A DNA stretch of 64,000 nucleotides from Ranitomeya imitator (taxonomy: Eukaryota). The position numbers and the translations under genes are program-made. Location: NCBI RefSeq assembly GCF_032444005.1, contig NC_091290.1, positions 7,626,001 through 7,690,000 on the forward strand, written 5' to 3'. Within the stretch, counting starts at the first letter, position 1, and the number at the start of each line of letters is the position of its first letter. Below the pieces are notes generated by a model. That model was given only the letters and a program-made list of their open reading frames with translations. It searched no databases and was not told the DNA's origin. Shown here piece after piece: positions 1 to 48,069 of this stretch.

Positions 1-355
1 CCCTGGTGTCCATAAAAGATACGATCTATTGAGATACAAAATAGATTATCCTGAAGGGAAAGTGTAAAGAAACAGCACAGAAAAGCCAGAAGTCTCAAAA
101 ATGGTGACACAAACCAATTTTTTTTTTTTTCACCTACTGATATGGTAAAATAAAACGTGTATGTGGCTGGTTAGTAGCAATCGCAATGAGCCGGAGAAAC
201 AATATTAATATTTATTATTATTATTATTATGTAAGTTTCCATTCACTGCTGGAGAGGTTATAAAGTGAGGGCCGTCCCCTTCCGCTCGCTGCAGATTCCC
301 ATCGTTCACAATGTCGTCCTGTCGGTTTCTTCCTGATTCCTCTTCTTCCCATCAG

Positions 356-462
356 ATGGCGTTCCCTGTTCTCAGAATCCGAGCGCGGCCATAAAGAGCT
401 GGATCCACTACAATAAGGAGGAGCGGGAGGGATTCTCCGAGGTGCTGATCTCCAGCCTGAAG
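356..462 (+). CDS. KBTBD4: KBTBD4 penultimate coding exon (end of BACK region)
   Basis: Polypyrimidine tract plus CAG acceptor at 353-355 and AAG|GTAGGA donor at 463. Translates (D)GVPCSQNPSAAIKSWIHYNKEEREGFSEVLISSLK, matching human DGVPCSQNP...WINFNKEERE...SLK from recall. Ends in phase 0 and joins EIGENVHIY at 7193. Confidence 0.93.
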
Positions 463-553
463 GTAGGAACAGTCCACAGTGGAATCGTCACAGCACAACG
501 GTTTACTTTTTGCTACACTTCCATAAGTCATTATCGCTAGTGTTAGGACAGGC

Positions 554-958
554 AGAGCAACCGTGATAGAAAGGTGTCAGGACACGCAGAGCAACCGTGA
601 TAGAAAGGTGTCAGGACACGCAGAGCAACCGTGATAGAAAGGTGTCAGGACACGCAGAGCAACCGTGATAGAAAGGTGTCAGGACACGCAGAGCAACCGT
701 GATAGAAAGGTGTCAGGACACGCAGAGCAACCGTGATAGAAAGGTGTCAGGACACGCAGAGCAACCGTGATAGAAAGGTGTCAGGACACACAGAGCAACC
801 GTGATAGAAAGGTGTCAGGACACGCAGAGCAACACAGCTATGATAGAAAGGTGTCAGGACACGCAGAGCATCGCAGCTGTGATAGAAAGGGGTCAGGACA
901 TGCAGAGCATCACAGCTGTGATAGAAAGGTGTCAGGACACGCAGAGCATCACAGCTCC
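554..958 (+). repeat. Minisatellite, 34-bp unit AGAGCAACCGTGATAGAAAGGTGTCAGGACACGC changing to a 39-bp variant at the 3' end
   Basis: Unit starts at 554 and 588 (period 34). The last copies have the 39-bp form that gives the 13-aa repeat in ORFs 767/801. Confidence 0.95.
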
Positions 959-1494
959 CTGTCTGTGCAGCTGCAGACCTGTCTCATTGCCTGTGGAAAG
1001 CTGCTACAATGGACACCTTATCAGACGTGGAGCGATGGATGTAGTTGCCCCTTCTGGTGAATCCGGTTGTCCTTCATGTGGAGCTCGGGTGCGGTGCTTC
1101 CCTGTTGAAGGTGCGGGACCACCCGGTATGTACGGAGCCACACGGCCTCATATAATGTAGCTGGTTCTCATGTTGTCCGCCATCATATCTAGTAGCCACA
1201 ATCTGCCTCGCGCTTCTTTTCATCTCCTTTACACTTGGTGACATCAGGGATGGTGATTTCCCTACGTGGCGCCATGTTCTGCTCCTCGGATCATTTTCAC
1301 ATCGATTTCCCGGGGCTTCTCCTACTTGTGTCCTGGACGTCGGCAGCAGAGTCAGGGGTCTGGATGTGTGGGGTCTGTACACACACTACTAACATAAAGT
1401 TAGGGACACTTGGCTTTTGGGTGAAATTTATGGAAACTGTAAAGTTCCTGCTACAGTGATCTTTTATCCTGTAAGTCGGGCATTAAGTAGAACG

Positions 1495-3026
1495 AATAAC
1501 TTGTCCTGTGGCCTTCAGCATCAATTACAGCCGACATCATCTGCTGCTAACAAGTGGAGTTATTGTCGCTCGGACATTGCGTCCCACTCTTCTTGTAGCG
1601 CGGCCCTCCGGTCATTGAGGTTCTAGGGTACAGAGTTATGAGCCTCTACATGGTGACCCAGAGGTATTCTGTGTGATTCAGGCCAGGAGAAAGTGTGGAC
1701 TGCTTCATCTGAGGTCCCCCCAGGCTCCATCAGCTGGTCCCTAATGATGCGACCTCGATGAGATGGAGCATGGCCGTCCATGAAGATGACCTTAGGCCGG
1801 TGTCTGTGCATAGCTACAATCAGTGGATTAATGACGTTATTCCCGTAGTAGTGGCCAGTGTAGGGCCGTTCTGTATGACTAGACCATGTAACCACCACCA
1901 AAGCCTCGTTTGGTGACCACAGTGGCTGATGCACAGCGCACTCCTTGAAGTCTCCAACATCATTGGCGGCCATCTTTTGTGCTCAGCGTGAACAGAGTCT
2001 CATCAGTGAACAGCGCTGAGGCCACTAGTCCCTCATCCTGCGTAGATGTTCCCTGGCCCATGGTGGTGCGGTCAGGTACGTTGCCGGTCGTCTAGCACAA
2101 AGACCACGCTGATGTGAATGGTTTTGAATGGTCTGACCCTTGGGCGCCTCTCCCGTCCCTTACATGTGCGGCGTTCATCATCCGGGTCTGAAGGGCATCG
2201 TTCACAATGAAGCAGTCATTAGTGGAGGATGTGGCAGAGGACGTCCACGTCTGTGACTCTTCCGATCTCTCTTTTCACCGGCTGATGACTCTGTGACGCT
2301 CTGAACCCAGTGGCCACTTCTCTGCCTTTCTGTGACTCTTCCCGTCTCTGTAGTCATGGCTGATGACTCTGATGCTCAGTGATCACTTCTCTGCCTTTCT
2401 GTGACTCTTCCAGTCTCTGTAGTCATGGCTGATGACTCTGATGCTCAGTGGCCACTTCTCTGTCTTTCTGTGGCACTTCCAGTCTCTGTAGTCACGGCTG
2501 ATGACTCTGATGCTCAGTACTTCTCTGTCTTTCTGTGGCACTTCCAGTCTCTGTAGTCACGGCTGATGACTCTGACACTCGGAGCTCAGTGGCCACTTCT
2601 CTGCCTTTCTGTGACTCCTCCCGTCTCTGTAGTCACGGCTGATGACTCTGATGCTCAGTACTTCTCTGCCTTTCTATGGCTCTTCCAGTCTCTGTAGTCA
2701 CGGCTGATGACTCTGATGCTCAGTACTTCTCTGCCTTTCTATGGCTCTTCCAGTCTCTGTAGTCACGGCTGATGACTCTGTGACGCTCAGTGGTCACTTC
2801 TCTGCCTTTCTATGGCTCTTCCAGTCTCTGTAGTCACGGCTGATGACTCTGTGACGCTCAGTGGTCACTTCTCTGCCTTTCTATGGCTCTTCCAGTCTCT
2901 GTAGTCACGGCTGATGACTCTGACACTCGGAGCTCAGTGGCCACTTCTGTCTGAGCACATCCTTCCTGAGGCCTCATGATGGTGACGTCCTGTGGGATCA
3001 GCTGTTCGGTGTCGTCTTGGTCTCAT
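1495..3026 (-). pseudogene. Tc1 transposase pseudogene (frameshifts and stops), split by an internal minisatellite
   Basis: The - strand reads ATGAGACCAAGACGACAC at 3026, then segments resembling CSQTEVATELRV, RGLCARRP, WAREHLR, ALFTDE (first catalytic D), FMDGHAPSHRGRII (second D region), the SPDLNxxE-LW motif, ALQEEWDAM and AVIDAEGHRTSY. Confidence 0.85.
2280..2950. repeat. Minisatellite, about 10 copies of 65-78 bp, derived from the Tc1 HTH coding region
   Basis: GGCTGATGACTCT recurs at about 2280, 2358, 2427, 2496, 2561, 2637, 2702, 2767, 2838 and 2909. The reverse complement encodes YRETGRVTERQRSG/VATELRV pieces. Confidence 0.92.
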
Positions 3027-3639
3027 GATGATGACGACTGTTTAATGCCAATTCTAGTTGACCCCTGAACAGTCGCACATGTGCGTTCTGTGGATCCTGT
3101 GTTGCTGGAAACTGCTTATTACTAGAGCAGGAAGGAGCGGCCATTGCCCAGCTGGACAGCCGTATTTGTGACTGACCCTGTCTGTACGTCGCCTCTGCTA
3201 TCACAAACCGCCATGTTGTGCTCACACATCACGACCGCCCTCCGCAGAGAAACCGACCACAGGACGGAGACGACGGCCGCAGCCATTCCTCACACTGCTG
3301 AGGTAAAGTGAAAGCTGAGCCCTGATTGGTTGTTATGGGTAATACACAGTACCACTTGGTCTTGATGGAGGCCCCGTAAGTGTCATCCTGTACAGACCGC
3401 ACAGAGGAAACGTGCCCCCCGCGCCCCCATGTATATGTACAATAAATGTGAAGTAAATGGAGAAAGGTATGTGCCCCCTCCACATTCACTTACTGGATCT
3501 ATTCTGACCTCCTACTCTACATCCATAGACATTAAAGAAGTTCTCCACGATGGGGAAAAAAAAATGACCCCAGTTATGTAATAGAAATGGCAGCCGCTCC
3601 TAGTCATGGGTCAGGACGGTCTGCAGTCTTTAGAAGCAC

Positions 3640-3880
3640 CGCTCCTGAGACCTGCGCCTCACTGACAGAGGAACTGTATGGCACTGGTGAGCGGCTGGAG
3701 ACGGGAAAATAAAAATCTCCTCCTTGGCCAACTGAACACAGAGGACTGAGGCCGGACAATAAAAAATCCTCAGTCAGCCGAGTAGATTTCTTTTCCTGTC
3801 ACCTCCCGTCTTCATCCGCTCACCCGTGTTGTGCTCTTACCATTCAGCTCCTCTGTCAGTTGAGGCGCAGGTGTTGGGAG
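3640..3880. mobile_element. MITE-like inverted-repeat element (Kolobok/T2-like left end TTAA|AGAAGTTCTCCAC at about 3534)
   Basis: ACCTGCGCCTCACTGACAGAGGA (about 3651-3673) is inverted as TCCTCTGTCAGTTGAGGCGCAGGT (about 3849-3872). No matching right terminus found. Confidence 0.45.
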
Positions 3881-4046
3881 CTGTCTCTTCAGACCTCAGC
3901 CTGACTTGTCAATTTTTATTTTTTTTAGAATGAGCTATTCTAATTTTCACATTAAAAAAATAAAGTTTAATTTGAAAATTATCAAGCAATATCTGTTCAC
4001 TTTTTTTTTGTTTGTTTTTTCTTTTTTCCCCTAATGGTTATATAAG

Positions 4047-4121
4047 GAGGAAGAAATAGACGAGGATGTGGAAGACTTCATTTTTGAGTACTCTGAATCA
4101 GACACTGATGAATATGTTGAA
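4047..4121 (+). CDS. Nested gene, exon A (acidic: EEEIDEDVEDFIFEYSESDTDEYVE)
   Basis: TAAG| acceptor after a T-rich tract, 75 nt (25 codons), GAA|GTAGGT donor, phase 0 at both ends. Confidence 0.7.
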
Positions 4122-4218
4122 GTAGGTGTTTTGTTTTTTTTTATTTTTTATTATGAAGCCATCCTATATGTTTTACCTTCCAAACACCGTTGTTTTTATT
4201 TCTCTTGTGTAATAACAG

Positions 4219-4296
4219 GAAAGTTCAGAGGAATATGAAGAAGCACCTGACCGTAAGCATGCGGCCATGATCCGCGTCGAGAGAGAGGGTGAACTC
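4219..4296 (+). CDS. Nested gene, exon B (ESSEEYEEAPDRKHAAMIRVEREGEL)
   Basis: CAG| acceptor at 4216-4218, 78 nt, CTC|GTGAGG donor, phase 0. Flanked by 97-nt and 103-nt T-rich introns. Confidence 0.7.
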
Positions 4297-4361
4297 GTGA
4301 GGTTTCACTAAATTTATTTGTAATATTTTTACACTTTTTTTTTTTTCAAAGAAATGTAATT

Positions 4362-4398
<37 letters not shown>

Positions 4399-4399
4399 G

Positions 4400-4758
4400 C
4401 AGTTCCGGGCTCAACTCCAGAAACGTGTAGAGGAAAACAACCTCCGTACCCCATGGTGCCTCCAGAATGACCCACTATGGGGCCTGGGTGAGGAACGGCC
4501 GCTCCCGCCGCCCGATCCTAAAGGAAGACTGCAGAACACAAACTGGTGTCAGTGCGGGCATTGTTCCATCATGCCTCATGTAGCGGAAAGCGTCTGCTGC
4601 CGAGAGGTTCCCGCCATTAACAGATTCCTAGAAAACGAGTCTTGTGTTACGAGACACATGGACTTTGCCGGCTTCATACTGTCCAGAGACCTTCTCGTTC
4701 AGATGCTTCAGTTCTCCACCAAATTGACAGCGTCAAATTTTGCAGAAAAGGAAAATGG
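4400..4758 (+). CDS. Nested gene, exon C: P2X7 ballast/KolX-like Cys-rich domain, N-half
   Basis: Long poly-T plus TAG| acceptor. Open frame QFRAQLQKR...RLQNTNWCQCGHCSIMPHVAESVCCREV...CVTRHMDF...EKENG. The WCxCGxC..E..CCRE and CVTxHxxF motifs match the P2X7 C-terminal ballast family. GG|GTAAAT donor, phase 2. Confidence 0.85.
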
Positions 4759-4990
4759 GTAAATTTTTTTTTTTTATTTTTTTTGCATATTTTATTTTTA
4801 CCCTGTATCCCATAATGTGATATTGCTGTTCCATCAATATAAAATAATCCGTACAAAAATACCTGTTAAATCTGTTAACTAACAATGGGGCAGAAGTCTC
4901 TGGCTGTCGGCGCATGCTGCAGGTTGCTGAGCCACCTGATGCTTTATTACATGGAGCACAGGGATGGACACGCTGATTGATATTATTTAT

Positions 4991-5700
4991 TTAATAATAA
5001 TAATAATAATAATTTTTATTTATATAGCGCCAACATATTCCGCAGCGCTTTACAAATTATAGAGGGGACTTGTACATACAATAGACATTACAGCATAACA
5101 GAAATACAGTTCAAAACAGATACCAAGAGGAGTGAGGGCCCTGCTCGCAAGCTACAAACTATGAGGAAAAGGGGAGACACGAGAGGTGGATGGTAACAAT
5201 TGCTATAGTTATTCGGACCAGCCATAGTGTAAGGCTTGGGTGTTCATGTAAAGCTGCATGAACCAGTTAATTAATTTATTTATTTTTTTTTTTTTTTAAT
5301 ATAGGCCACACAGGGATCGTTAGGTTAATGCATTGAGGCGGTAGGCCAGTCTGAACAAATGAGTTTTTAGGGCACGCTTAAAACTGTGGGGATTGGGGAT
5401 TAATCGTATTATCCTAGGTAGTGCATTCCAAAGAATCGGCGCAGCACGTGTAAAGTCTTGGAGACGGGAGTGGGAGGTTCTGATTATTGAGGATGCTAAC
5501 CTGAGGTCATTAGCGGAGCGGAGGGCACGGGTAGGGTGGTAGACTGAGACCAGAGAGGAGATGTAGGGTGGTGCTGAGCCATGGAGTGCTTTGTGGATGA
5601 GGGTAGTAGTTTTGTACTGGATTCTTGAGTGGATGGGTAACCAGTGTAATGACTGGCACAAGGTAGAGGCATCGGTGTAACGGTTGGTGAGGAATATGAT
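4991..5700 (-). mobile_element. 5'-truncated L2/CR1-clade LINE (RT C-terminus, 3' UTR and (ATT)n tail) inside the nested gene's last intron
   Basis: ORF 5320-5703(-) carries LHWLPI..RIQYK..LRSAND..F..AAP.LWNALP..IR..FKRALKTHLF. The 3' end has the AGCGC-loop-GCGCT stem, AATAAA and a TTA/ATT repeat tail at about 4991-5052. Confidence 0.88.
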
Positions 5701-5721
5701 CATTTATTTTTTTTCCTCCAG

Positions 5722-5917
5722 GCACCTTCGGGAGGCAGCCTATCGCAGATTCACTACCATGATCTACGGATTTCTCGGGAATAGACGCGGATTAACGGTG
5801 CCTTCGTGTGTGGTCCGTAACATTCGGGAGACGTTCCCGAGCCCCGACGGAAATTATCCCAGCTGTAAATGGTATTGGGAGTCCGTGTCCGGTCCGCCGG
5901 CCGACGTGGCTTTCTAA
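5722..5917 (+). CDS. Nested gene, exon D: ballast/KolX-like domain C-half and stop
   Basis: TTTTCCTCCAG| acceptor; its first G completes the phase-2 GG codon. Reads HLREAAYRRFTTMIYGFLGNRRGLTVPSCVVRNIRETFPSPDGNY...*, compared with P2X7 LRHCAYR...LPSCCRWRIRKEFPKSEGQY from recall. AATAAA follows at about 6237. Confidence 0.85.
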
Positions 5918-6893
5918 GTGATGTCCCGAGCGATCAGACGTGCGCGGCACTTTATCTCTTCACTGTTATGCGGTTTTATATTTCATATGGGAAAAAAAGT
6001 TAACATTTTTCTAAGTTTGTTTAAAAAAAATAAAACGGGGTTTTTTCGGTGTTTTCATAATTTTCCCTTCATGGCTGTGTTATTTGGGATATTATTAGGT
6101 GTTGGTTAAGTTTTGTTTTTATATGAAAAGTTTAAAAAAACCACAAAAAAAAAACCCCTTAAGTTATCGCACTGTATCAGGACAAAGGTTGTATATTTGC
6201 TGTGTTAGATGTTTGTTGTAATTTTTCACAAAGTTGAAATAAAAATTTGTTAAAGAAAAGTGAAAGATCTTTGTTTTTTTTTGTTTTTTATGAGTATTGT
6301 AGTGATTTATCTTAAAGTGGTTGTGACGTCCTCACCTTGATTTGTCATATTGCTATCTGACCTTTACCCTGCTGAGAAACTACCGCCATTATGAGACCTG
6401 TGCCGTAAAGGGTTCACTGTTAGGCAGCTGGTACAGAGGAGCGAGTGGATTTGCAGGTCCCTAGTCCAGCGGCCATGTCAGTCATCCATGGCCGGCATAA
6501 GGGAGCCCTGTGAGCCACCTCCTTTCTGCCAACATGCCCGGATCCTCTTCGGATTTGTAGGTGCAGCACAATGTCCTAGTGGTGGTGTGACGGCCATATT
6601 ATGTAGCGCCAGGATGGTTAATCAGAAGAAGGACCCCGGGGATGCAGGTAGGAGGTGATTCACAGGGCTCCTGTGCGGCAGCCATGGCTTCTGGATGAAG
6701 GTCATGCAGATTGCTTGGCTCCTCTATAGTAGGTGGTACATGTAACCTCCAAATAACGAAAAGCAAAACTGATGCTCTGCATGTTCTGACACCTTTCTAT
6801 GATCACTGTCGCCAGTTTACCAAATCTCCAGGGAGAAATCTTACCCCTTAGACCCATCAGAGGCCGCTCATACAGCTGAATCGGGTTTGTTGC

Positions 6894-6938
6894 TTTGCAC
6901 TGAGGAGGGGCAAACACCCCGAAACAGGTGTCTGCAAA
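6894..6938 (+). ncRNA. Type I hammerhead ribozyme (minimal, Penelope/retrozyme-like), sense to the KBTBD4 intron
   Basis: TTTGCA (6894-99) CTGAGGA (6900-06) GGGG-CAAACA-CCCC (6907-20) GAAA (6921-24) C-AGGT-G T C (cleavage triplet GUC, 6930-32) TGCAAA (6933-38). Complete CUGANGA/GAAA core with stems I, II and a 2-bp stem III. Confidence 0.85.
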
Positions 6939-7192
6939 CAGATTCTGGTTTGGCTCTTATCCTGTGACAAGGCTCGTTAAAGAGTTAAGGATTGCTCCAT
7001 CCAATAAATCCTATACGTGGCTGTTGCGAGCGTTCTTTCCCTCTGGGAGGGCGCTCATTTTCGTAGAGCCTCTGACATATAATTGCTGGGACCTTGTTTT
7101 TTTTTTTTCAGAGTAAATCCCTTTTAATGACCTCCGCTTTTATGTTTTCAGAAAATCTTTTAAAGCGTTTCCTTGTGTATTTTGTCTTTAAG

Positions 7193-8053
7193 GAAATCGG
7201 GGAAAACGTGCACATCTACCTGATCGGGAAGGAGGAATCTCGCACGCACTCCATTGCCGTCTCTCTCCACTGTGCGCAGGACGACTCTATAAGTGTAAGC
7301 GGGCAGAACAGTCTGTGCCACCAGATCACTGCCGCGTGCAAACATGGCGCCGACCTCTACGTGGTAGGAGGGTCCATACCCCGTCGAATGTGGAAATGTA
7401 ATATGGAGACCATGGACTGGGAGCGATGCGCACCGCTTCCCCGGGACCGTCTGCAGCATACGCTGGTGTCCGTGCCCGGCAAGGATGCCATCTACTCCCT
7501 GGGGGGTAAGACCTTGCAGGACTCGCTGTCTAACGTGGTGATTTACTACCGAGTATCGGACAATGTCTGGACAGAGACTAGTCAGCTGGAGGTCAGCATC
7601 TCCGGGGCGGCGGGGGTGAACCTGAACGGGCTCATCTACCTACTGGGAGGCGAGGAGAACGACCTGGACTTCTTCACCAAACCCTCTCGTCTCATCCAGT
7701 GTTTCGATACCACCACAGAGAAGTGCCACGTCAAACCCTACCTGCTGCCGTTTGCGGGTCGAATGCACGCGGCCGTTCACAAGGACCTGGTGTTCATCGT
7801 CGCGGAGGGGGACTCGCTGGTGTGTTATAACCCGCTGCTGGACAGCTTCACCCGGCTGTGCCTGCCCGAGGTCTGGAGCTCGCGGCCAGCGCTCTGGAAA
7901 ATCGCCAGCTGCAACGGCTGCATCTACGTGTTCCGGGATCAATACAAGAAAGGGGACGCCAACACCTTCAAGTTAAACCCCGCCACCTCGGTGGTGACCG
8001 TCACCAGCGGCATTCGCTTTCTGCTTACCAATCTGCAGTTTTTACTGGCATGA
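7193..8053 (+). CDS. KBTBD4: KBTBD4 last coding exon (Kelch repeats)
   Basis: TTTAAG| acceptor at 7192. EIGENVHIYLIGKE..THSIAVSLHC..GGSIPRRMWKC..DRLQHTLVSVPGKDAIYSLGGK..LLTNLQFLLA* is nearly identical to vertebrate KBTBD4. The ORF-track start at 7094 is intronic read-through. Confidence 0.97.
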   Translation, partial: EIGENVHIYLIGKEESRTHSIAVSLHCAQDDSISVSGQNSLCHQITAACKHGADLYVVGGSIPRRMWKCNMETMDWERCAPLPRDRLQHTLVSVPGKDAIYSLGGKTLQDSLSNVVIYYRVSDNVWTETSQLEVSISGAAGVNLNGLIYLLGGEENDLDFFTKPSRLIQCFDTTTEKCHVKPYLLPFAGRMHAAVHKDLVFIVAEGDSLVCYNPLLDSFTRLCLPEVWSSRPALWKIASCNGCIYVFRDQYKKGDANTFKLNPATSVVTVTSGIRFLLTNLQFLLA

Positions 8054-21629: not shown

Positions 21630-24600
21630 AGAATGAGTGCCGCCACTCTCACCGTCCACACCGCGGGTCACTGGTCTCAGAATGCCGCCGCTCTCACCGT
21701 CCGCACCACGGGTCACTGGTCTCAGAATGCCGCCACTCTCACCGTCCGCACCACGGGTCACTGGTCTCAGAATGCCGCCACTCTCACCATCCGCACCGCG
21801 GGTCACTGGTCTCAGAATGCCGCCGCTCTCACCGTCCACACCGCGGATCACTGGTCTCAGAATGCCGCCACTCTCACCGTCCGCACCGCGGGTCACTGGT
21901 CTCAGAATGCCGCCACTCTCACCGTCCGCACCGTGGATCACTGGTCTCAGAATGCCGCCACTCTCACCGTCCGCACCGCAGATCACTGGTCTCAGAATGC
22001 CGCCACTCTCACCGTCCGCACCGCAGATCACTGGTCTCAGAATGCCGCCACTCTCACCGTCCGCACCGCGGGTCACTGGTCTCAGAATGCCGCCGCTCTC
22101 ACCGTCCGCACCGCGGGTCACTGGTCTCAGAATGCCGCCACTCTCACCGTCCGCACCGCAGATCACTGGTCTCAGAATGCCGCCACTCTCACCGTCCGCA
22201 CCGCGGGTCACTGGTCTCAGAATGCCGCGACTCTCACCGTCCGCACCGTGGATCACTGGTCTCAGAATGCCGCCACTCTCACCATCCGCACCGCGGGTCA
22301 CTGGTCTCAGAATGCCGCTGCTTTCACCATCCGCACCGTGGATCACTGGTCTCAGAATGCCGCCACTCTCACCATCCGCACCGCGGGTCACTGGTCTCAG
22401 AATGCCGCTGCTTTCACCGTCCACACCGTGGATCACTGGTCTCAGAATGCCGCCACTCTCACCGTCCGCACCACGGATCACTGGTCTCAGAATGCCACCG
22501 CTCTCACCGTCCGCACCGTGGATCACTGGTCTCAGAATGCCGCTACTCTCACCGTCCGCACCACGGGTCACTGTTCTCAGAATGCCGCCGCTCTCACCGT
22601 CCGCACCGCAGATCACTAGTCTCAGAAGGCCGCCGCTTTCACCGTCCGCACCACGGGTCACTGGTCTCAGAATGCCGCCGCTCTCACCGTCCGCACCGTG
22701 GATCACTGGTCTCAGAATGCCGCCGCTCTCACCGTCCGCACCGTGGATCACTGGTCTCAGAATGCCGCCGCTCTCACCGTCCGCACCGCAGATCACTGGT
22801 CTCAGAATGCCGCCGCTCTCACCGTCCGCACCGCATATCACTAGTCTCAGAAGGCCGCCGCTTTCACCGTCCGCACCACGGGTCACTGGTCTCAGAATGC
22901 CGCCGCTCTCACCGTCCGCACCACGGATCACTGGTCTCAAAATGCCGCCGCTCTCACCGTCCGCACCGCGGGTCACTGGTCTCAGAATGCCACTGCTTTC
23001 AACGTCTGCCCTGCGGGTCACTGGTCTCAAAATGCCGCCGCTCTCACCGTCCGCACCGTGGATCACTGGTCTCAGAATGCCGCTGCTTTCAACGTCCGCC
23101 CCGCGGGTCACTGGTCTCAGAATGCCGCCGCTCTCACCGTCCGCATCGCGGGTCACTGGTCTCAGAATGCCGCCGCTCTCACCGTCTGCACTGCGGATCA
23201 CTGGTCTCAGAATGCCGCCGCTCTCACCGGCCGCACCGCAGATCACTGGTCTCAGAATGCCGCCTCTCTCACCGTCTGCACCGCGGATCACTGGTCTCAG
23301 TATGCCGCCACTCTCACCATCTGCACTGCGGATTACTGGTCTCAGTATGCCGCCACTCTCACCGTCTGCACCGCAGGTCACTGGTCTCAGAAGGTCACCG
23401 CTTTCACCGCCTGCACCATGGGTCACTGGTCTCAGAATGCCGCTGCTCTCAGAATGCTGCCGCTCTCAGCGTCCGCACCGCGGATCACTGGTCTCCGAAT
23501 GCCGCCGCTCTCACTGTCCGCACCGCGGATCACTGGTCTCAGAATGCCGCCGTTCTCGCCTTCCGCACTGCTGGTCACTGGTCTCAGAATGCCGCCACTC
23601 TCACCGTCCGCACCGTGGATCACTGGTCTCAGAATGCCGCCGCTCGCACCGGCCGCACCGCAGAGCACTGGTCTCAGAATGCCGCCGCTCTCACCGTCCG
23701 CACTGCGGATCACTGGTCTCAGAATGCCGCCGCTCTCACCGTCCGCACCGCGGATCACTGGTCTCAAAATGCCGCCGCTCTCACCGTCCGCCCCGCGGGT
23801 CACTGGTCTCAGAATGCTGACGCTCTCACCGTCCGCACCGCAGATCACTGGTCTCGGAATGCCGCCGCTCTCACCGTCCGAATCGCGGGTCACTGGTCTC
23901 AGAATGCCGCCGCTCTCACCGTCTGCACCGCGGATCACTGGTCTCAGAATGCCGCCGCTCTCACCGGCCGCACCGCAGATCACTGGTCTCAGAATGCCGC
24001 CGCTCTCACCGGCCGCATCGCGGGTCACTGGTCTCAGAATGCCGCCGCTCTCACCGTCCGCATCGCGGGTCACTGGTCTCAGAATGCCGCCGCTCTCACC
24101 GTCTGCACCGCGGATCATTGGTCTCAGAATGCCGCCGCTCTCACCGGCCGCACCGCAGATCACTGGTCTCAGAATGCCGCATCTCTCACCGTCTGCACCG
24201 CGGATCACTGGTCTCAGTATGCCGCCGCTCTCACCATCTGCACTGCGGATCACTGGTCTGAGTATGCCGCCACTCTCACCGTCTGCACCGCAGGTCACTG
24301 GTCTCAGAAGGTCACCGCTTTCACCGTCTGCACCGCAGGTCACTGGTCTCAGAAGGTCACCGCTCTCACCGTCTGCACCGCAGGTCACTGGTCTCAGAAG
24401 GTCACCGCTTTCAGCGTCTGCACCGCGGATCACTGGTCTCAGAATGCCGCCGCTCTCACTGTCCGCACCGCGGGTCACTGGTCTCAGAATGCCGCCACTC
24501 TCAATGTCTGCCCCGCGGATCACTGGTCTTAGAATGCCACCGCTCTCACCGTCTGCCCCGCAGGTCACTGGTCTCAGAATGCCGCCGTTCTCGCCTTCCG

Positions 24601-27600
24601 CACTGCTGGTCACTGGTCTCAGAATGCCGCCGCTTTCACTGTCTGCACCGCGGGTCACTGGTCTCAGAATGCTGCCGCTCTCACCGTCTGCACTGCGAAT
24701 ACTTGGTCTCAGAATGCCGCCTCTCTCACCGTCCGCACCGCGGGTCACTGATCTCAGAATGCCGCCGCTCTCACCGTCCTCCCCGCCAGTCACTGGTCTC
24801 AGAATGTTGCCGCTCTCACCATCCGCACCGCGGATCATTGGTCTCAGAATGCCGCCGTTCTCGCCTTCCGCACCGCGAGTCACTGGTCTCAGAATGCCGC
24901 CGCTCTCACCGTCTTCCCCGCGGGTCACTGGTCTCAGAATGCCGCCGCTCTCACCGGCCGCACCGCAGATCACTGGTCTCAGAATGCCGCCGCTCTCACC
25001 GGCCGCATCGCGGGTCACTGGTCTCAGAATGCCGCCGCTCTCACCGTCCGCATCGCGGGTCACTGGTCTCAGAATGCCGCCGCTCTCACCGTCTGCACCG
25101 CGGATCATTGGTCTCAGAATGCCGCCGCTCTCACCGGCCGCACCGCAGATCACTGGTCTCAGAATGCCGCATCTCTCACCGTCTGCACCGCGGATCACTG
25201 GTCTCAGTATGCCGCCGCTCTCACCATCTGCACTGCGGATCACTGGTCTGAGTATGCCGCCACTCTCACCGTCTGCACCGCAGGTCACTGGTCTCAGAAG
25301 GTCACCGCTTTCACCGTCTGCACCGCAGGTCACTGGTCTCAGAAGGTCACCGCTCTCACCGTCTGCACCGCAGGTCACTGGTCTCAGAAGGTCACCGCTT
25401 TCAGCGTCTGCACCGCGGATCACTGGTCTCAGAATGCCGCCGCTCTCACTGTCCGCACCGCGGGTCACTGGTCTCAGAATGCCGCCACTCTCAATGTCTG
25501 CCCCGCGGATCACTGGTCTTAGAATGCCACCGCTCTCACCGTCTGCCCCGCAGGTCACTGGTCTCAGAATGCCGCCGTTCTCGCCTTCCGCACTGCTGGT
25601 CACTGGTCTCAGAATGCCGCCGCTTTCACTGTCTGCACCGCGGGTCACTGGTCTCAGAATGCTGCCGCTCTCACCGTCTGCACTGCGAATACTTGGTCTC
25701 AGAATGCCGCCTCTCTCACCGTCCGCACCGCGGGTCACTGATCTCAGAATGCCGCCGCTCTCACCGTCCTCCCCGCCAGTCACTGGTCTCAGAATGTTGC
25801 CGCTCTCACCATCCGCACCGCGGATCATTGGTCTCAGAATGCCGCCGTTCTCGCCTTCCGCACCGCGAGTCACTGGTCTCAGAATGCCGCCGCTCTCACC
25901 GTCTTCCCCGCGGGTCACTGGTCTCAGAATGCCGCTGCTCTCACCATCCGCACCGCGGGTCACTGGTCTCAGAATGCTGCCGCTCTCACCATCTGCACCG
26001 CGGATCATTGGTCTCAGAATGCCGCCTCTCTCACTGTCCGCACCGCGGATCACTGGTCTCAGAATGCTGCCGCTCTCACCGTCCGCACCGCGGGTCACTG
26101 GTCTCAGAATGCTGCCGCTCTCACCGTCTGCACCGCGGACCATTGGTCTCAGAATGCCGCCTCTCTCACTGTCCGCACCGCGGGTCACTGGTCTCAGAAT
26201 GCCGCCACTCTCACCGTCTGCCCCGTGGATCACTGGTCTTAGAATGCCGTCACTCTCACCGTCTGCCCCGCGGGTCACTGGTCTCAGAATGCCGCCGTTC
26301 TTGCCTTCCGCACTGCTAGTCACTGGTCTCAGAATGCCGCCACTCTCACCGTTCGTGCCGCGGGTCAATGGTCTCAGAATGCTGCCGCTCTCACCGTCCG
26401 CACCGCAGATCATTGGTCTCAGAATGCCGCCGTTCTCGCATTTCGCACCGCGGGTCACTGGTCTCAGAATGCCGCCGTTCTTGCCTTCCGCACCGCGGGT
26501 CACTGGTCTCAGAATGCCGCCGTTCTCACCGTCTTCCCCGCGGATCACTGGTCTCAGAATGCCGCCACTCTCACCGTCTGCCCCGTGGATCACTGGTCTT
26601 AGAATGCCGTCGCTCTCACCGTCTGCCCTGCGGGTCACTGGTCTCAGAATGCCGCCGTTCTTGCCTTCCGCACTGCTGGTCACTGGTCTCAGAATGCCGC
26701 TGCTCTCACCGTATGCACCGTGGATCACTGGTCTTAGAATGCCGTCGCTCTCACCGTCTGCCCCGCGGGTCACTGGTCTCAGAATGCCGCCGTTCTCGCC
26801 TTCCGCACTGCGGGTCACTGGTCTCAGAATGCCGCCGCTCTCACCGTCTTCTCCGCGGGTCACTGGTCTCAGAATGTCACTGCTCTCACCGTCTGCCCCG
26901 CAGGTCACTGGTCTCAGAATGCCGCCGTTCTCGCCTTCCGCACTGCTGGTCACTGGTCTCAGAATGCCGCCGCTTTCACCGTCTGCACCGCGGGTCACTG
27001 GTCTCAGAATGCTGCCGCTCTCACCGTTCGCACCGCGGGTCACTGGTCTCAGAATGCTGCCGCTCTCACCGTCTGCACTGCGAATACATGGTCTCAGAAT
27101 GCCGCCTCTCTCACCGTCCGCACCGCGGGTCACTGATCTCAGAATGCCGCCGCTCTCACCATCCTCCCCGCCGGTCACTGGTCTCAGAATGTCGCTGCTC
27201 TCACCATCCGCACCGCGGGTCACTGGTCTCAGAATGCTGCCGCTCTCACCATCTGCACCGCGGATCATTGGTCTCAGAATGCCGCCTCTCACTGTCCGCA
27301 CCGCGGATCACTGGTCTCAGAATGCTGCCGCTCTCACCGTCCGCACCGCGGGTCACTGGTCTCAGAATGCTGCCGCTCTCACCGTCTGCACCGCGGATCA
27401 TTGGTCTCAGAATGCCCCTCTCACTGTCCGCACCGCGGGTCACTGGTCTCAGAATGCCGCCGTTCTCACCGTCTTCCCCGCGGATCACTGGTCTCAGAAT
27501 GCCGCCACTCTCACCGTCTGCCCCGTGGATCACTGGTCTTAGAATGCCGTCGCTCTCACCGTCTGCCCCGCGGGTCACTGGTCTCAGAATGCCGCCGTTC

Positions 27601-29205
27601 TTGCCTTCCGCACTGCTGGTCACTGGTCTCAGAATGCCGCTGCTCTCACCGTATGCACCACGGGTCACTGGTCTCAGAATGCCGCCACTCTCACCGTTCG
27701 TGCCGCGGGTCAATGGTCTCAGAATGCTGCCGCTCTCACCGTCCGCACCGCGGATCATTGGTCTCAGAATGCCGCCGTTCTCGCATTCCGCACCGAGGGT
27801 CACTGGTCTCAGAATGCCGCCGTTCTTGCCTTCCGCACTGCTGGTCACTGGTCTCAGAATGCCGCCGCTTTCACCGTTCGCACCACGGGTCACTGGTCTC
27901 AGAATGCCGCCACTCTCACCGTTCGTGCCGCGGGTCAATGGTCTCAGAATGCTGCCGCTCTCACCGTCCGCACCGCGGATCATTGGTCTCAGAATGCCGC
28001 CGTTCTCGCATTCCGCACCGCGGGTCACTGGTCTCAGAATGCCGCCGTTCTTGCCTTCCGCACCGCGGGTCACTGGTCTCAGAATGCTGCCGCTCTCACC
28101 GTCCGCACCGCGGATCATTGGTCTCAGAATGCCGCCGTTCTCGCATTCCGCACCGCGGGTCACTGGTCTCAGAATGCCGCCGTTCTTGCCTTCCGCACCG
28201 CGGGTCACTGGTCTCAGAATGCTGCCGCTCTCACCGTCTGCACTGCGAATACTTGGTCTCAGAATGCCGCCTCTCTCACCATCCGCACCGCGGGTAACTG
28301 ATCTCAGAATGCCGCCGCTCTCACCGTCTTCCCCGCCGGTCACTGGTCTCAGAATGTCGCCGCTCTCACCATCCGCACCGCGGATCATTGGTCTCAGAAT
28401 GCCGCCGTTCTCGCCTTCCGCACCGCGAGTCACTGGTCTCAGAATGCCGCCGCTCTCACCGTCTTCCCCGCGGGTCACTGGTCTCAGAATGCCGCTGCTC
28501 TCACCATCCGCACCGCGGGTCACTGGTCTCAGAATGCTGCCGCTCTCACCATCTGCACCGCGGATCATTGGTCTCAGAATGCCGCCTCTCTCACTGTCCG
28601 CACCGCGGATCACTGGTCTCAGAATGCTGCCGCTCTCACCGTCCGCACCGCGGGTCACTGGTCTCAGAATGCTGCCGCTCTCAACGTCTGCACCGCGGAT
28701 CATTGGTCTCAGAATGCCGCCTCTCTCACTGTCCGCACCGCGGGTCACTGGTCTCAGAATGCCGCCACTCTCACCGTCTGCCCCGTGGATCACTGGTCTC
28801 AGAATGCCGCCACTCTCACCGTCTTCCCCGCGGATCACTGGTCTCAGAATGCCGCCACTCTCACCGTCTGCCCCGTGGATCACTGGTCTTAGAATGCCGC
28901 CGTTCTTGCCTTCCGCACTGCTGGTCACTGGTCTCAGAATGCCGCTGCTCTCACCGTATGCACCGTGGATCACTGGTCTTAGAATGCCGTCGCTCTCACC
29001 GTCTTCCCCGCGGGTCACTGGTCTCAGAATGCCGCCGTTCTCGCCTTCCGCACCGCGGGTCACTGGTCTCAGAATGCCGCCGCTCTCACCGTCTTCTCCG
29101 CGGGTCACTGGTCTCAGAATGCCACTGCTCTCACCATCCGCACCATGGGTCACTGTTCTCAGAATGCAGCCGCTCTCACCGTCCACGCCGCGGGTCACTG
29201 GTCTC
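21630..29205. repeat. 7.6-kb CpG-rich VNTR, 45-bp unit CACTGGTCTCAGAATGCCGCCGCTCTCACCGTCCGCACCGCGGGT (about 168 copies)
   Basis: 15-aa periodic pseudo-ORFs in several frames, and a block duplication of 990 bp (22 units). Confidence 0.97.
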
Positions 29206-44400: not shown

Positions 44401-44600
44401 GGGTGGAATCGGAGGGGCGCTGGGTGGCATCGGTGGAGCGTGGGGTGGCATTGGAGGGGCACGGGGTGGAATCGGAGGGGCACTGGGTGGAATCGCAGGG
44501 GCGCGGGGTGGCATCGGTGGAGCGGGGCAGCATTGGAGGGGAGCAGAGTGGTATCGGAGGGGCCATGGCGGCATAGGAGCGCGGTGCGGCATTGGAGGCA
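41470..44600. repeat. G-rich hierarchical repeat: short GGCATTGGAGGGG/GGAATCGGAGGGG subunits organised into about 205-bp units and 409/387-bp blocks
   Basis: Identical ORF starts at 42583, 42788, 43197, 43606, 43993 and 44380 (offsets 205, 409, 409, 387, 387). Confidence 0.93.
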
Positions 44601-45039
44601 ATGGCGGCTGATCCAGCAGCTCCAGAACTTTATTGGAGAGAGCGCTGCACTCATTACAAACTTGGGACATCACTGAGATCGCAGAGGTGGCCGGTAACCT
44701 TGCCAACAAGGTGTAAACTATAGAATTATAAGTCCCACCATTGTGGAGGGCACAGGGGGTTTCAGCAGGACGTAACTTGCGCCTTTGACCTATTTCTGAT
44801 GAGACAATAGCGGGGCTCGCCCTCCGGTCGCTGCTGTGTGGAGCGGAGCCCTGACATGACGGCACCCGGATGTCCTGGGTCGGGATGGAAGGGGTTAAGG
44901 TTTCTGTCCAGTCTGTGGATCCCCATTCTCCCGCACAGGGGATCAGTGATCGGCCGACACCCGACGATCACCCGACACCTGACGATCACCCGCCTGAGAT
45001 CCGGCCGCGGCCCATTCCAGAGCGCAGGACCCGCGCCGT

Positions 45040-45431
45040 GACCAATCACAGCGCAGCTTTCATTGCTTCAGAGCCGCTTAAGAACTAAAAGCTGAGCTCT
45101 GATTGGTTGCTATGGCCATTTTTTTATAGTACAGAATCTGAGTCCTAACACTACAAGTCCCAGCAGCCGCGCTCCCGGCCCCGTCACTATCGATCCCCGC
45201 GCACTCGGCGCCATTGTCGCTGTCCGATGATTATTATTGTCGCCCCTGCTGTGACCTCCCCCTCCCCACGGCTCAGTGGTCCGTCCCATTACTGGTCGCC
45301 TCATGCTGCCCCCTGCTCCCCCCGCCCCCGAGACCGCCTGTGGATCCTCCCGGAAGTGCCGCCATTTTGGATCCTCTGCGCGTAGAGAGAAGACGAGAAG
45401 AGCGTGTGACCGACGGCTGCGAGCGGTGAGT
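45040..45431 (+). promoter_or_regulatory. Housekeeping-type promoter and candidate non-coding first exon of a + strand gene (by synteny probably CELF1)
   Basis: CCAAT 45042, ATTGG 45102, ZNF143/THAP11-type ACTACAAGTCCCAGCAGCC 45150-68, adjacent CCGGAAGTG (45350) and CCGCCATTTT (45359), donor GCG|GTGAGT at 45426. Gene identity is inference only. Confidence 0.6.
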
Positions 45432-45654
45432 GACGGGAGGGCGGCGGGGAGGTCGGGGCCGAACACCGGCCGGGGCTGGAGTACTGGGCTCGGCGGCCGG
45501 GATGGTGACGGGAAGATTGCGTAAGCGGCGGGTAACGGGATCCTAGCGGCCGCCCCACCCCGCTGCGCTCCCGGGCGGGGATAACGGCGCTCTGCTCCGC
45601 TACCGCACATGGCCCCGGGGCGGGGTGTGAGCGGAGGGGAGACGGCGGCGAAGA

Positions 45655-47002: not shown

Positions 47003-47176
47003 TGTCCTCCTCCACATGTGTCCGGTTATTTCTAGGCATCAGGATCTGTATATAATGTAGGGGAGATGGGGGTCTGCAGACGCCCCCAATGGGCCGGGAA
47101 GGCGGAGGTTGTACCCGCCCCAGAGGGGTGAAGAGATATGGGAGGATATGCTTCCCCAATATATAAGAATTCTGTG

Positions 47177-47785
47177 TACGCGCCCCTGAGGGAGGGACTA
47201 TAACATATACCCCCGAGGGAAGGACTATGGTGGCCTCATATACGCCCCTGAGGGACTGTGGTGCTACATACACGCCCCTGAGGGAGGGACTATGGTGTCA
47301 TGTACACGCCCCTGAGGGAGGGACTATGGTGTCATGTACACGCCCCTGAGGGAGGGACTATGGTGTCATGTACACGCCCCTGAGGGAGGGACTATGGTGT
47401 CATGTACACGCCCCTGAGGGAGGGACTATGGTGTCATGTACACGCCCCTGAGGGAGGGACTATGGTGTCATGTACACGCCCGAGGGAGGGACTATGGTGT
47501 CATGTACACGCCCCTGAGGGAGGGACTATGGTGTCATGTACACGCCCCTGAGGGAGGGACTATGGTGTCATGTACACGCCCCTGAGGGAGGGACTATGGT
47601 GTCATGTACACGCCCCTGAGGGAGGGACTATGGTGTCATGTACACGCCCCTGAGGGAGGGACTATGGTGTCATGTACACGCCCCTGAGGGAGGGACTATG
47701 GTGTCATGTACACGCCCCTGAGGGAGGGACTATAACATATACAGGGACTGTGGTGGCCACATACAATGATGGTGTCCCCTGAGGG
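47177..47785. repeat. 34-bp minisatellite ACACGCCCCTGAGGGAGGGACTATGGTGTCATGT (about 14 perfect copies plus degenerate flanks)
   Basis: Direct periodicity over 47270-47735. Confidence 0.94.
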
Positions 47786-48069
47786 TAGATGGGCCTGTGT
47801 ACACTATGGAGGTGCAGTGCGGCCCCTCGGCTCCGTTCCCTGGCAGAGCTGCTCTGCGCTGTCAGTCCTGTAGACAGTGGCTGGGCAGAGATGGGCGCGC
47901 TCCACCTCCATTCACGCCATGGGCCTCAGCAGAGCTCCGGTCTCGGCCCTGCAAGTCGTCGCTTGTCCTGCGTGCACCGTGATTGTGAGCGTCCGGCACG
48001 GTGTGCTCTGGATCCCGCCAGATTGTGCCGAGCGTGTCTGAGGAGTGTCCTGTGGATGGCTGGAGCTCG

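What the first reader, a model, noticed from the sequence alone, without database searches (positions are those of the whole stretch)
462..4047. Possible in-frame KBTBD4 BTB-BACK::ballast chimera by alternative 3' exon use
Seen: the KBTBD4 donor at 462 is phase 0, the first recognisable exon of the nested gene opens at a phase-0 acceptor (4047) on the same strand, and no in-frame ATG exon for the nested gene was found upstream (the nearby ATG at 4034 closes immediately). Inference: splicing 462 to 4047 would give ...ISSLK-EEEIDED... and replace the whole Kelch substrate-binding exon of this CUL3 adaptor with an acidic/Zn-binding ballast module. That would parallel how P2X7 is thought to have captured the domain. 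This is a hypothesis; phase agreement alone has a 1-in-3 chance.
Basis: inference. Interest (0 to 1): 0.72.

Follow-up and report, generated by a model that had tools for sequence, protein, structure and literature searches.

The report
Ballast cassette inside frog KBTBD4 intron
A transposon-derived "ballast" domain gene sits in the last intron of the poison-frog KBTBD4 ubiquitin-ligase gene; gene models of five other frogs splice it onto KBTBD4 in place of the substrate-binding end, but the data for this frog show only a separate, self-starting transcript.

Summary
The claim that the nested gene has no ATG exon of its own is wrong. Exon 3213-3302 (30 codons, phase-0 donor) joined to exons 4047-4121, 4219-4296, 4400-4758 and 5722-5917 translates exactly to RefSeq XP_069596049.1, a stand-alone 265-aa protein of Ranitomeya imitator, the source of this window.

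The proposed chimera exists as NCBI gene models elsewhere. Their ballast domains form one clade, so the cassette predates these families.

For this frog, transcript contigs from four studies show the ballast exons transcribed and spliced. KBTBD4 contigs pass position 462 unbranched and continue onto sequence outside the intron stretch. No 462->4047 or 462->4219 joint appeared, but contigs cannot exclude minor isoforms.

The ballast fold is KolX, an accessory protein of Kolobok transposons (PMC9587614). A second BTB-BACK::ballast model exists at KLHL2 in this frog.

The scan had already noted this nested gene (s1-279655) and a stand-alone ballast gene elsewhere in this genome (s1-295039).

The parts
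356..462 (+). Last BACK-domain exon of KBTBD4 (...DGVPCSQNPSAAIKSWIHYNKEEREGFSEVLISSLK), with a phase-0 donor AAG|GTAGGA
   Evidence: It is identical to the same stretch of R. variabilis KBTBD4. KBTBD4 mRNA contigs lie on 355-463 in three runs.
463..7192 (+). Last intron of KBTBD4 (phase 0), host of the nested cassette. It holds tandem arrays at 540-948 and 2308-2923 and other repeats.
3213..3302 (+). Annotated first coding exon of the stand-alone ballast gene (MLCSHITTALRRETDHRTETTAAAIPHTAE), donor GAG|GTAAAG, phase 0. It appears lineage-specific.
   Evidence: (exact match to XP_069596049.1). Contig depth in bin 3130-3329 is similar to that of the ballast exons in X1 and X19. The 3302->4047 joint itself was not seen. 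The N-terminus is not shared with the Anomaloglossus model.
4047..4121 (+). Exon A: acidic, 25 codons, symmetric phase 0. The acceptor is TATAAG|G, behind a long pyrimidine tract at 3995-4031.
   Evidence: The joint 4121->4219 (GT..AG) is present in contigs of X1 and X19. Its equivalent is included in R. variabilis X2 and skipped in X3.
4219..4296 (+). Exon B: acidic, 26 codons, symmetric phase 0. It holds an in-frame ATG (..HAAMIR..).
   Evidence: Contig record coordinates fit donor 4296 and acceptor 4400.
4400..4758 (+). Exon C: first part of the ballast (P2RX7_C / ZCD / KolX) domain with the WCxCxxC, CC and C motifs. It ends in phase 2.
   Evidence: Pfam PF20478 E=2e-9. Contigs on 4405-4749 in X1 and X19, and on 4636-4749 in X5.
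5722..5917 (+). Exon D: end of the ballast domain and stop codon (TAA at 5915-5917).
   Evidence: Pfam PF20478 E=3e-8. X5 record 18 joins about 4758 to 5721.
5918..6243 (+). Probable 3' UTR, with AATAAA at 6238-6243
   Evidence: Contigs cover 5721-6118, 5732-6180 and 5937-6329. The signal was read from the sequence. The transcript end itself was not shown.
7193..8053 (+). Canonical last exon of KBTBD4 (Kelch propeller), with a phase-0 acceptor
   Evidence: Kelch Pfam hits, the ORF end at 8053, and agreement with the end of the 522-aa product.

Best explanation
The four ballast exons are a domesticated KolX-type gene (KolX is the accessory protein of Kol0 Kolobok DNA transposons). It has lain in the phase-0 last intron of KBTBD4, on the same strand, since before the hyloid frog families split.

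Its two acidic 5' exons (A and B) are symmetric phase-0 exons, so the locus can be read in two ways. (1) As a stand-alone mRNA from an intronic start. In R. imitator this uses a lineage-specific ATG exon at 3213-3302 and gives the 265-aa RefSeq protein. (2) As an alternative 3'-terminal cassette of KBTBD4, where the donor at 462 joins exon A or exon B. That gives BTB-BACK :: disordered acidic linker :: ballast, with no Kelch propeller.

Shown: the gene is transcribed and spliced in this frog, the fold is ballast, the cassette is orthologous across six species, and reading (2) is what NCBI models in five other species. Inferred: both readings occur, and in R. imitator the stand-alone form dominates while the chimera is minor or conditional.

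Also inferred, from established KBTBD4/CRL3 biology: a chimeric protein would keep BTB dimerisation and CUL3 binding and lose the Kelch surface that engages HDAC1/2-CoREST. It would then act either as a CUL3 adaptor with a new Zn/nucleotide-binding receptor module, or as a Kelch-less partner that heterodimerises with canonical KBTBD4.
For: - Sequence and phases.
- Exact identity of the 5-exon CDS to XP_069596049.1, and its nesting inside the 522-aa KBTBD4.
- Transcription and splicing in this species: joint 4121->4219 in two studies, contigs across exons B-C and C-D, and depth at 3130-3329 similar to the ballast exons in X1 and X19.
- Chimeric isoform models with Pfam BTB+BACK+P2RX7_C in R. 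variabilis (X2, X3), Bufo bufo, B. gargarizans, Engystomops (X2, X3) and E. coqui. In the three species checked (both Bufo species and R. variabilis) they share the KBTBD4 start and end about 2.1-2.3 kb before the canonical stop.
- The KBTBD4-locus ballast domains form one clade that follows the species tree (SH-aLRT 95).
- All 8 Cys columns are kept in six species.
- AF2 model: ballast core pLDDT >90, residues 1-60 disordered. Only P2X7 structures match it significantly (phmmer E about 1e-10).
- KolX origin of the ballast fold: PMC9587614. Stand-alone ZCD proteins in frogs: PMC7016195.
- Anomaloglossus also annotates the nested copy as a stand-alone gene inside KBTBD4.
Against:
- Contigs begin at 4093, so the 5' half of exon A and its upstream partner are unseen.
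- KBTBD4 contigs are unbranched at 462 in three runs, and no R. imitator chimeric isoform is in the protein collection cluster.
- All chimeric evidence is automated gene models. Their RNA support could not be inspected here, and such models can propagate between annotations through protein alignment.
- The first exon at 3213-3302 is not conserved (Anomaloglossus starts MEADLW...) and could be ab initio filler.
- The R. imitator copy carries 11 private substitutions against 3 in R. variabilis. Six hit columns that are invariant in the other five species, which may mean relaxed constraint.
Confidence: 0.55

Rival explanations
1. Chimera only. In this frog too, the ballast exons are essentially alternative terminal exons of KBTBD4. 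The RefSeq first exon 3213-3302 would then be a filler chosen by the gene predictor to give an orphan ORF a start codon.
For: - Exon A has no ATG, and its frame is closed just upstream.
- The N-terminal exon is not conserved between R. imitator and Anomaloglossus.
- Several ATG-plus-donor candidates arise by chance in the intron.
- The congener and four other species are modelled only as chimeras. At the three loci checked (both Bufo species and R. variabilis) no nested gene is listed.
- Bufo, Engystomops and E. coqui have no Met upstream of the domain core.
- No 3302->4047 joint was listed.
Against: - KBTBD4 contigs at depth 17-32 are unbranched at 462, while the ballast contigs have depth 5-7. 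If all ballast RNA came from 462, a branch of roughly 1:3 to 1:5 should often survive assembly (inference).
- Depth over 3130-3329 matches the ballast exons in X1 and X19.
- Two independent annotations (R. imitator, Anomaloglossus) model a stand-alone gene.
- Paralogues elsewhere are stand-alone genes with their own 5' exons.
Confidence: 0.2
2. Strictly independent nested gene. The ballast gene has its own promoter and is never productively joined to KBTBD4. The chimeric isoforms in other frogs would be artefacts of model building, such as rare read-through introns, or one early model propagated through cross-species protein evidence.
For: - RefSeq of this species has the stand-alone model only.
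- No chimeric joint appears in contigs of four studies.
- No transcript contig encoding a chimeric product was found in the assembly collection for Bufo or R. variabilis, only the genome annotations.
- The phase match alone is a 1-in-3 event and is inherited, not independently repeated.
Against: - Six separate annotation runs give chimeras, including exon-A-included and exon-A-skipped pairs in two species.
- The earliest models cannot have been copied from an older chimera (inference).
- There is no alternative start codon in three species.
- A second, unrelated BTB-BACK-Kelch gene (KLHL2) carries the same kind of isoform in three dendrobatids, this species included.
Confidence: 0.2
3. Decaying transposon remnant. 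The cassette is a relic of a Kolobok insertion with no function, its transcripts are noise from a permissive intron, and the open frame survives by chance.
For: - The ballast fold is of transposon (KolX) origin (PMC9587614).
- The R. imitator copy evolves faster than its congener's and has changed six otherwise invariant positions.
- Expression is low (contig depth 5-7) and absent in run X6.
Against: - An intact 4-exon ORF is kept at the same locus in six species of four or more families, at 42-48% identity between families, with all zinc-binding Cys columns conserved.
- Splicing is precise.
- The predicted core is confidently folded.
- No transposase was recognised beside it (limited check).
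Confidence: 0.05

Closest known systems
P2X7 receptor: capture of a ballast (ZCD/KolX) domain by a P2X4-like gene (Rump et al. 2020, PMC7016195; Kojima & Bao 2022, PMC9587614)
   Same: The same domain family: Pfam PF20478, conserved Cys set, and a fold match to P2X7 structures only. It is used the same way, as a C-terminal module appended to an unrelated host protein.
   Different: The host is a BTB-BACK CUL3 adaptor, not an ion channel. The module replaces the host's own C-terminal domain rather than extending it. In P2X7 the fusion is fixed. Here it would be optional, by alternative 3' exons, with a stand-alone transcript still modelled. There is no C-cys anchor. Of the GDP-contact residues, only those matching R546 and R578 are kept.
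Stand-alone ZCD/ballast proteins: fish Nanor and the three Xenopus ZCD proteins (PMC7016195); KolX of Kolobok-1_XT (PMC9587614)
   Same: The RefSeq product of this window (265 aa) has the same layout: a short non-conserved N-terminus, an acidic stretch and one ballast domain. Paralogues at other loci in Hyla and Dendropsophus share the layout of the last four exons.
   Different: This copy is nested, on the same strand and phase-compatible, in a host gene, and is modelled as fused to that host in five species. No transposase or transposon ends were recognised beside it, and it is syntenic across families, so it is not a mobile copy.
Canonical KBTBD4 (CRL3-KBTBD4 substrate receptor; PMC11882451, PMC9525703)
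   Same: The chimeric isoforms share exons 1-3, meaning the whole BTB and BACK domains, with canonical KBTBD4.
   Different: They lack the Kelch propeller, which is the surface used for HDAC1/2-CoREST recruitment by cancer mutants and UM171. They carry an acidic linker and a ballast domain instead.
Host-transposon fusion genes born by alternative splicing of a host gene into an intronic transposon gene
   Same: A transposon-derived coding cassette in a host intron, entered from a host donor and ending at its own polyadenylation site, with canonical and fused isoforms coexisting.
   Different: The captured part is the accessory protein KolX, not a transposase DNA-binding domain. The host part is a ubiquitin-ligase adaptor, not a KRAB/SCAN-type regulator.
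KLHL2 isoform X2/X3 models of R. imitator, R. variabilis and Phyllobates terribilis
   Same: The same architecture: BTB-BACK, an optional acidic exon, then a ballast domain, cut exactly at the BACK/Kelch boundary.
   Different: A different host gene and a distantly related ballast clade, so this is an independent event. So far it was seen only in dendrobatids.

Membership tests
P2X7 ballast / ZCD / KolX domain (Pfam PF20478) | Profile match above the curated gathering score | tested here: met
   Exon C scores 38.1 bits and exon D 34.1 bits (cut-off 23.5). The whole protein P0158 scores 81.9 bits.
P2X7 ballast / ZCD / KolX domain (Pfam PF20478) | The conserved Zn-coordinating cysteine set (7 conserved Cys per PMC9587614) | tested here: met
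   Eight Cys columns are invariant in the six KBTBD4-locus orthologues. C131, C136, C147, C148 and C163 are invariant and C133 nearly invariant across 73 family members.
P2X7 ballast / ZCD / KolX domain (Pfam PF20478) | Ballast fold as in solved P2X7 structures | tested here: met
   AF2 core pLDDT >90. In the Foldseek PDB search the 14 significant hits are all P2X7: E 4e-6 to 4e-5, and about 131 columns at rmsd 3.1-3.5 A for the best-fitting entries.
P2X7 ballast / ZCD / KolX domain (Pfam PF20478) | GDP-contact residues (rat R546, H547, R574, R578, K583) | tested here: inconclusive
   In the alignment, only the residues matching R546 and R578 are kept. Those matching H547, R574 and K583 are E, V and S. 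PMC7016195 reports the same pattern for non-mammalian ZCDs. Nucleotide binding cannot be judged from this.
Active Kol0 Kolobok transposon (KolX as its second gene) | Adjacent DDD/E transposase and terminal inverted repeats; multiple mobile copies | tested here: inconclusive
   No Kolobok transposase was recognised among the intron ORFs, but only two ORFs were scanned against Pfam. Inverted repeats near the cassette are short and unrelated to it. The same locus in six species argues for an immobile, domesticated copy. Transposon ends were not searched systematically.
BTB-BACK-Kelch CUL3 substrate adaptor (KBTBD/KLHL) | BTB and BACK domains | tested here: met
   R. variabilis chimeric isoform P0157 has BTB at 44-146 and BACK at 153-238. 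The window itself holds only the last BACK exon (356-462), which is identical in sequence.
BTB-BACK-Kelch CUL3 substrate adaptor (KBTBD/KLHL) | C-terminal Kelch propeller as substrate receptor | tested here: not met
   The chimeric isoforms end in P2RX7_C and have no Kelch hit. A chimera would therefore work like a BTB-BACK adaptor but is not a BTB-Kelch protein.
Host::transposon-gene fusion by alternative 3' exon use | Transcripts in which the host donor is joined to the intronic cassette, in this species | tested here: inconclusive
   No 462->4047 or 462->4219 joint appears in contigs of four runs, and KBTBD4 contigs are unbranched at 462. Contigs show presence, not absence. The joints are modelled in five other species.

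The most novel reading that the evidence does not exclude
Ballast/KolX cassettes have been captured repeatedly and independently by BTB-BACK-Kelch genes: KBTBD4 in the hyloid ancestor and KLHL2 in dendrobatids. Each capture sits exactly at the BACK/Kelch boundary and comes with an optional acidic linker exon. On this reading the chimeras are real, selected proteins, and the ballast domain serves as an alternative receptor or regulatory module of CUL3 ligases. That would be a new class of CUL3 adaptor. It would also be a living intermediate of the process that once made P2X7, with the stand-alone and fused forms still coexisting.
Probability: 0.3. Interest if true: 0.8.

Novelty: new variant of a known kind. 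Interest (0 to 1): 0.58.

Why it matters
Capture of the ballast domain by P2X7 is inferred only from an ancient, fixed fusion. Here the same transposon-derived domain sits in an intron of an unrelated gene, phase-compatible with it. It is modelled as a stand-alone gene in two frogs and as a fused isoform in five. If the fused transcripts are real, this is domain capture at its intermediate stage, and it can be tested by ordinary RNA and protein work.

It would also give KBTBD4, a CUL3 adaptor of medical interest, a Kelch-less isoform with a zinc/nucleotide-binding head. Together with the KLHL2 case, it would hint at a functional link between ballast domains and CUL3 ligases. The function of ballast/KolX domains is unknown, and a ligase context would be a first handle on it.

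I found no paper describing these isoforms in the library searched. They exist only as unremarked automated models.

Tried and rejected
1. Word search with exon C alone found nothing, because candidates are limited to 65-208 aa and the real proteins are longer.
2. Word search with the ballast part of the E. coqui chimera returned only itself.
3. Fetching DNA of the orthologous loci failed. The Anomaloglossus, R. imitator, Bufo, R. variabilis and Hyla assemblies are too large to be served, and two products are not on record. So no dN/dS, no comparison of splice sites at DNA level, and no check whether exon 3213-3302 is conserved.
4. Looking for transcript contigs by exact partial products (P0158:47-201 as a positive control for the contig seen, and P0158:1-55 for an exon1+A contig) found nothing. 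The control failed, so this says nothing.
5. Logan contig L001, from the cluster of the Bufo chimera, is a canonical BTB...Kelch transcript, not a chimera.
6. I considered that homology extends upstream of 4047 (W-L-Y-K in frame, against LWLLLLYEEE in Anomaloglossus and K|LLYEDK in E. coqui). The match is short and of low complexity (E 0.005), and in the Dendropsophus paralogue a similar motif lies in a different exon. I left it as unproven.
7. I considered that the contigs' common start at 4093 marks a 5' end. I rejected this because it is what a k=31 assembly graph gives at a branch just after 4121, between spliced and unspliced continuation (inference).
8. The ORF at 1623-1973(-) looks to me like a Tc1-type transposase remnant, but it has no Pfam hit at E<=0.001.


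Full report
**What is in the sequence**

Positions 356-462 are the last BACK-domain exon of KBTBD4 (...NPSAAIKSWIHYNKEEREGFSEVLISSLK). It ends in phase 0 at CTGAAG|GTAGGA. The Kelch exon starts at 7193 and runs to the stop at 8053.

Between them, on the same strand, lie four exons:
- A: 4047-4121, 25 codons, acidic.
- B: 4219-4296, 26 codons, acidic.
- C: 4400-4758.
- D: 5722-5917, ending in TAA.

Exons C and D each pass the gathering score of Pfam P2RX7_C. Joining 462 to 4047 gives an open frame, and so does joining 462 to 4219, because A and B are both symmetric phase-0 exons. The ATG at 4034 closes after three codons, and the frame of exon A is shut by TAA at 4032.

An ATG at 3213 in good context opens 30 codons ending at GAG|GTAAAG after 3302, again in phase 0. 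Exons 3213-3302 + A + B + C + D translate exactly to P0158, which is XP_069596049.1, "uncharacterized protein [Ranitomeya imitator]", 265 aa.

Its CDS span on record in GCA_032444005.1 is 2705 nt, the same as 3213-5917. It lies inside a 522-aa BTB/BACK/Kelch gene whose end maps to window position 8053. So the window is R. imitator, and that species' RefSeq annotation models a stand-alone nested gene with its own start.

The exon is not strong evidence by itself. A 3.6-kb intron offers several ATG-plus-donor candidates by chance. The N-terminus is also not shared with the Anomaloglossus orthologue, which starts MEADLW....

**RNA evidence in this species**

Contigs from four runs of four studies were laid on 330-6329.

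- The ballast gene is transcribed and spliced. The joint 4121->4219 (GT..AG) appears in X1 and X19. Contigs of 467 and 475 nt hold 29 nt of A plus B plus C, and their coordinates fit only donor 4296 and acceptor 4400. An X5 contig joins C to D. Contigs also cover 5721-6329.
- KBTBD4 contigs of 2.1-2.4 kb (depth 17-32) lie on 355-463 in three runs. They then run on for more than 1.3 kb onto nothing inside the laid stretch. That fits the canonical join to 7193, which lay outside the 6-kb limit.
- No joint from 462 to 4047 or 4219 was listed, and none from 3302 to 4047 either.
- Both ballast contigs begin at 4093. This is what a k=31 graph gives at a branch just past 4121 (inference). The 5' half of exon A and its upstream partner were therefore simply not seen.
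- Depth over 3130-3329 (4.7 in X1, 5.0 in X19) is close to that of the ballast contigs (5.6 and 6.8). This fits a first exon there but is not proof, because X5 and X6 show background in that bin.

Contigs show presence, not absence, so a minor chimeric isoform remains possible.

**Relatives**

An exhaustive profile-free search with exon C and one profile word search found the following.

R. variabilis KBTBD4 isoform X2 (P0157, 478 aa) reads ...EVLISSLK|EEKIDEDVED..., and X3 (P0151) reads ...ISSLK|ESSEEYEE..., which is donor 462 to exon B.
- Bufo bufo and B. gargarizans have an X2 isoform, Engystomops pustulosus has X2 (with the acidic exon) and X3 (without it), and Eleutherodactylus coqui has X2.
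- Pfam finds BTB, BACK and P2RX7_C in them and no Kelch.
- In the three species checked (both Bufo species and R. variabilis), the chimeric CDS starts where the canonical one starts. It ends 2.1-2.3 kb before the canonical stop, as 5917 does relative to 8053 here. No separate nested gene is listed at those loci.
- In Bufo, Engystomops and E. coqui no Met lies between the junction and the middle of the ballast domain.
- Anomaloglossus, like R. imitator, has a stand-alone model nested in KBTBD4.

A maximum-likelihood tree puts the seven KBTBD4-locus ballast domains in one clade that follows the species relationships (SH-aLRT 95). They are separate from the stand-alone paralogues of Hyla, Dendropsophus, Engystomops and Bufo. 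The Hyla and Dendropsophus paralogues lie at other loci, and the Dendropsophus one was seen to have its own 5' exons. The cassette is therefore one old orthologous insertion.

All of this rests on automated models. I could not inspect their RNA support, and no transcript contig encoding a chimera was found.

**What the domain is**

- P0158 matches only P2X7 among solved structures by sequence (E about 1e-10).
- An AlphaFold model built from a 73-sequence alignment has a confident core (residues 120-250, pLDDT >90) behind a helix (67-94) and a disordered N-terminal 60 residues, which are exon 1 and the acidic exons.
- Foldseek finds only P2X7 receptors (14 entries, E 4e-6 to 4e-5; about 131 columns at rmsd 3.1-3.5 A for the best-fitting entries).
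- Eight Cys columns are invariant in the six orthologues.
- Of the rat GDP contacts, only the equivalents of R546 and R578 are kept, as reported for other non-mammalian ZCDs (PMC7016195).
- Kojima & Bao (PMC9587614) showed that this fold is KolX, the second protein of Kol0 Kolobok transposons. They also showed that P2X7 arose by its capture and that Nanor is a domesticated copy. Rump et al. (PMC7016195) described stand-alone ZCD proteins in Xenopus.
- Neither paper mentions KBTBD4, and my other literature searches found nothing on such isoforms.

**How it most likely works**

Shown:
- A domesticated KolX-type gene lies in a phase-0 host intron.
- It is expressed and spliced.
- It has two symmetric phase-0 acidic 5' exons.

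Inferred:
- The locus is dual-use. An intronic start gives the stand-alone 265-aa protein. The KBTBD4 donor can instead enter exon A or B, giving BTB-BACK, an acidic linker and a ballast domain that terminates at the cassette's own poly(A) signal (AATAAA at 6238).
- From what is established for CRL3-KBTBD4 (PMC11882451, PMC9525703), such a protein would still dimerise and bind CUL3 but would lack the Kelch receptor. It would then be either a new-specificity adaptor or a Kelch-less partner of canonical KBTBD4.

I put the dual-use reading at about 0.55. Chimera-only and strictly independent each get about 0.2, and a functionless relic about 0.05.

**Caveats specific to this frog**

The R. imitator copy has 11 private substitutions against 3 in R. 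variabilis (Tajima chi-square 4.6, p 0.03; binomial 0.057). Six of them hit positions invariant in the other five species, for example CFQNDP to CLQNDP. R. imitator is also the species whose annotation lacks the chimera. The fused form may be reduced or lost here, or the difference may reflect only the evidence each annotation had.

**A second case**

KLHL2 isoform X2 of R. imitator (P0040, XP_069600288.1), and KLHL2 isoforms of R. variabilis and Phyllobates terribilis, are also BTB-BACK::ballast. They are cut at the BACK/Kelch boundary, with an optional acidic exon. Their ballast belongs to a distant clade, so two BTB-BACK-Kelch genes acquired the module independently. This is the basis of the more novel reading given separately.

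Noticed in passing
outside the window: P0040 (XP_069600288.1, R. imitator), P0165 (R. variabilis), P0164/P0166 (Phyllobates terribilis): KLHL2 isoform models that are BTB-BACK :: optional acidic exon :: ballast domain (...TPVSLPK|SPTESCDSD...|ELLERLQ...). Their ballast domain sits in a clade far from the KBTBD4-locus one, so a second BTB-BACK-Kelch gene captured the module independently.
   Followed up: partly
outside the window: P0030/P0045/P0075/P0079, P0025/P0046/P0060, P0094, P0119 (names): By my reading of their N-termini (no Pfam scan), ballast domains are also modelled behind KRAB-like N-termini (E. coqui), frog zinc-finger-associated N-termini (Hyla sarda), a Tc1-transposase-like N-terminus (Hyla sarda) and a THAP-like N-terminus (a pipefish). 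The cassette seems to be a frequent 3' partner in gene models. Whether these are real fusions or merged models is open.
   Followed up: no
window 4047-5917 compared with P0157 and P0001: The R. imitator ballast copy has 11 private amino-acid changes against 3 in R. variabilis (p about 0.03-0.06). Six are at positions invariant in five other species. All cysteine columns are kept.
   Followed up: yes
window 4296-4403: The two Ranitomeya models use different exon B/C splice sites. R. imitator uses 4296|4400, which RNA contig coordinates support. R. variabilis uses the equivalents of 4301|4403, with an exon B that appears 2 nt shorter in that stretch, and the frame is kept. This is a protein-level inference, because no R. 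variabilis DNA was available.
   Followed up: partly
window 4930-5720 (intron between exons C and D): A repeat whose contig depth is in the thousands to tens of thousands in all four runs. ORF 5320-5703 on the minus strand has no Pfam hit. It is a very abundant transcribed repeat family.
   Followed up: no
window 540-948 and 2308-2923: Two tandem arrays (34 nt x 11.6 copies and about 65 nt x 8.9 copies). They flank a minus-strand ORF (1623-1973) that looks to me like a Tc1-type transposase remnant but has no Pfam hit. Contig joints such as 2349->2998 show other genomic copies with fewer repeat units.
   Followed up: partly
window 3638-3884: An imperfect inverted repeat (arms 3638-3681 and 3840-3884) about 160 nt upstream of exon A, with a MITE-like hairpin shape.
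   Followed up: no
window 4064-4270: If a transcript began just upstream of exon A, an out-of-frame ATG at 4064 would open a uORF ending in a TGA that overlaps the in-frame ATG of exon B (ATGA). A ballast-only protein started in exon B would then depend on reinitiation. This comes from reading the sequence only.
   Followed up: no
window 22000-29000 and 42000-50000: Long stretches of 62-71% G+C with strong GC skew of opposite sign. Not examined.
   Followed up: no
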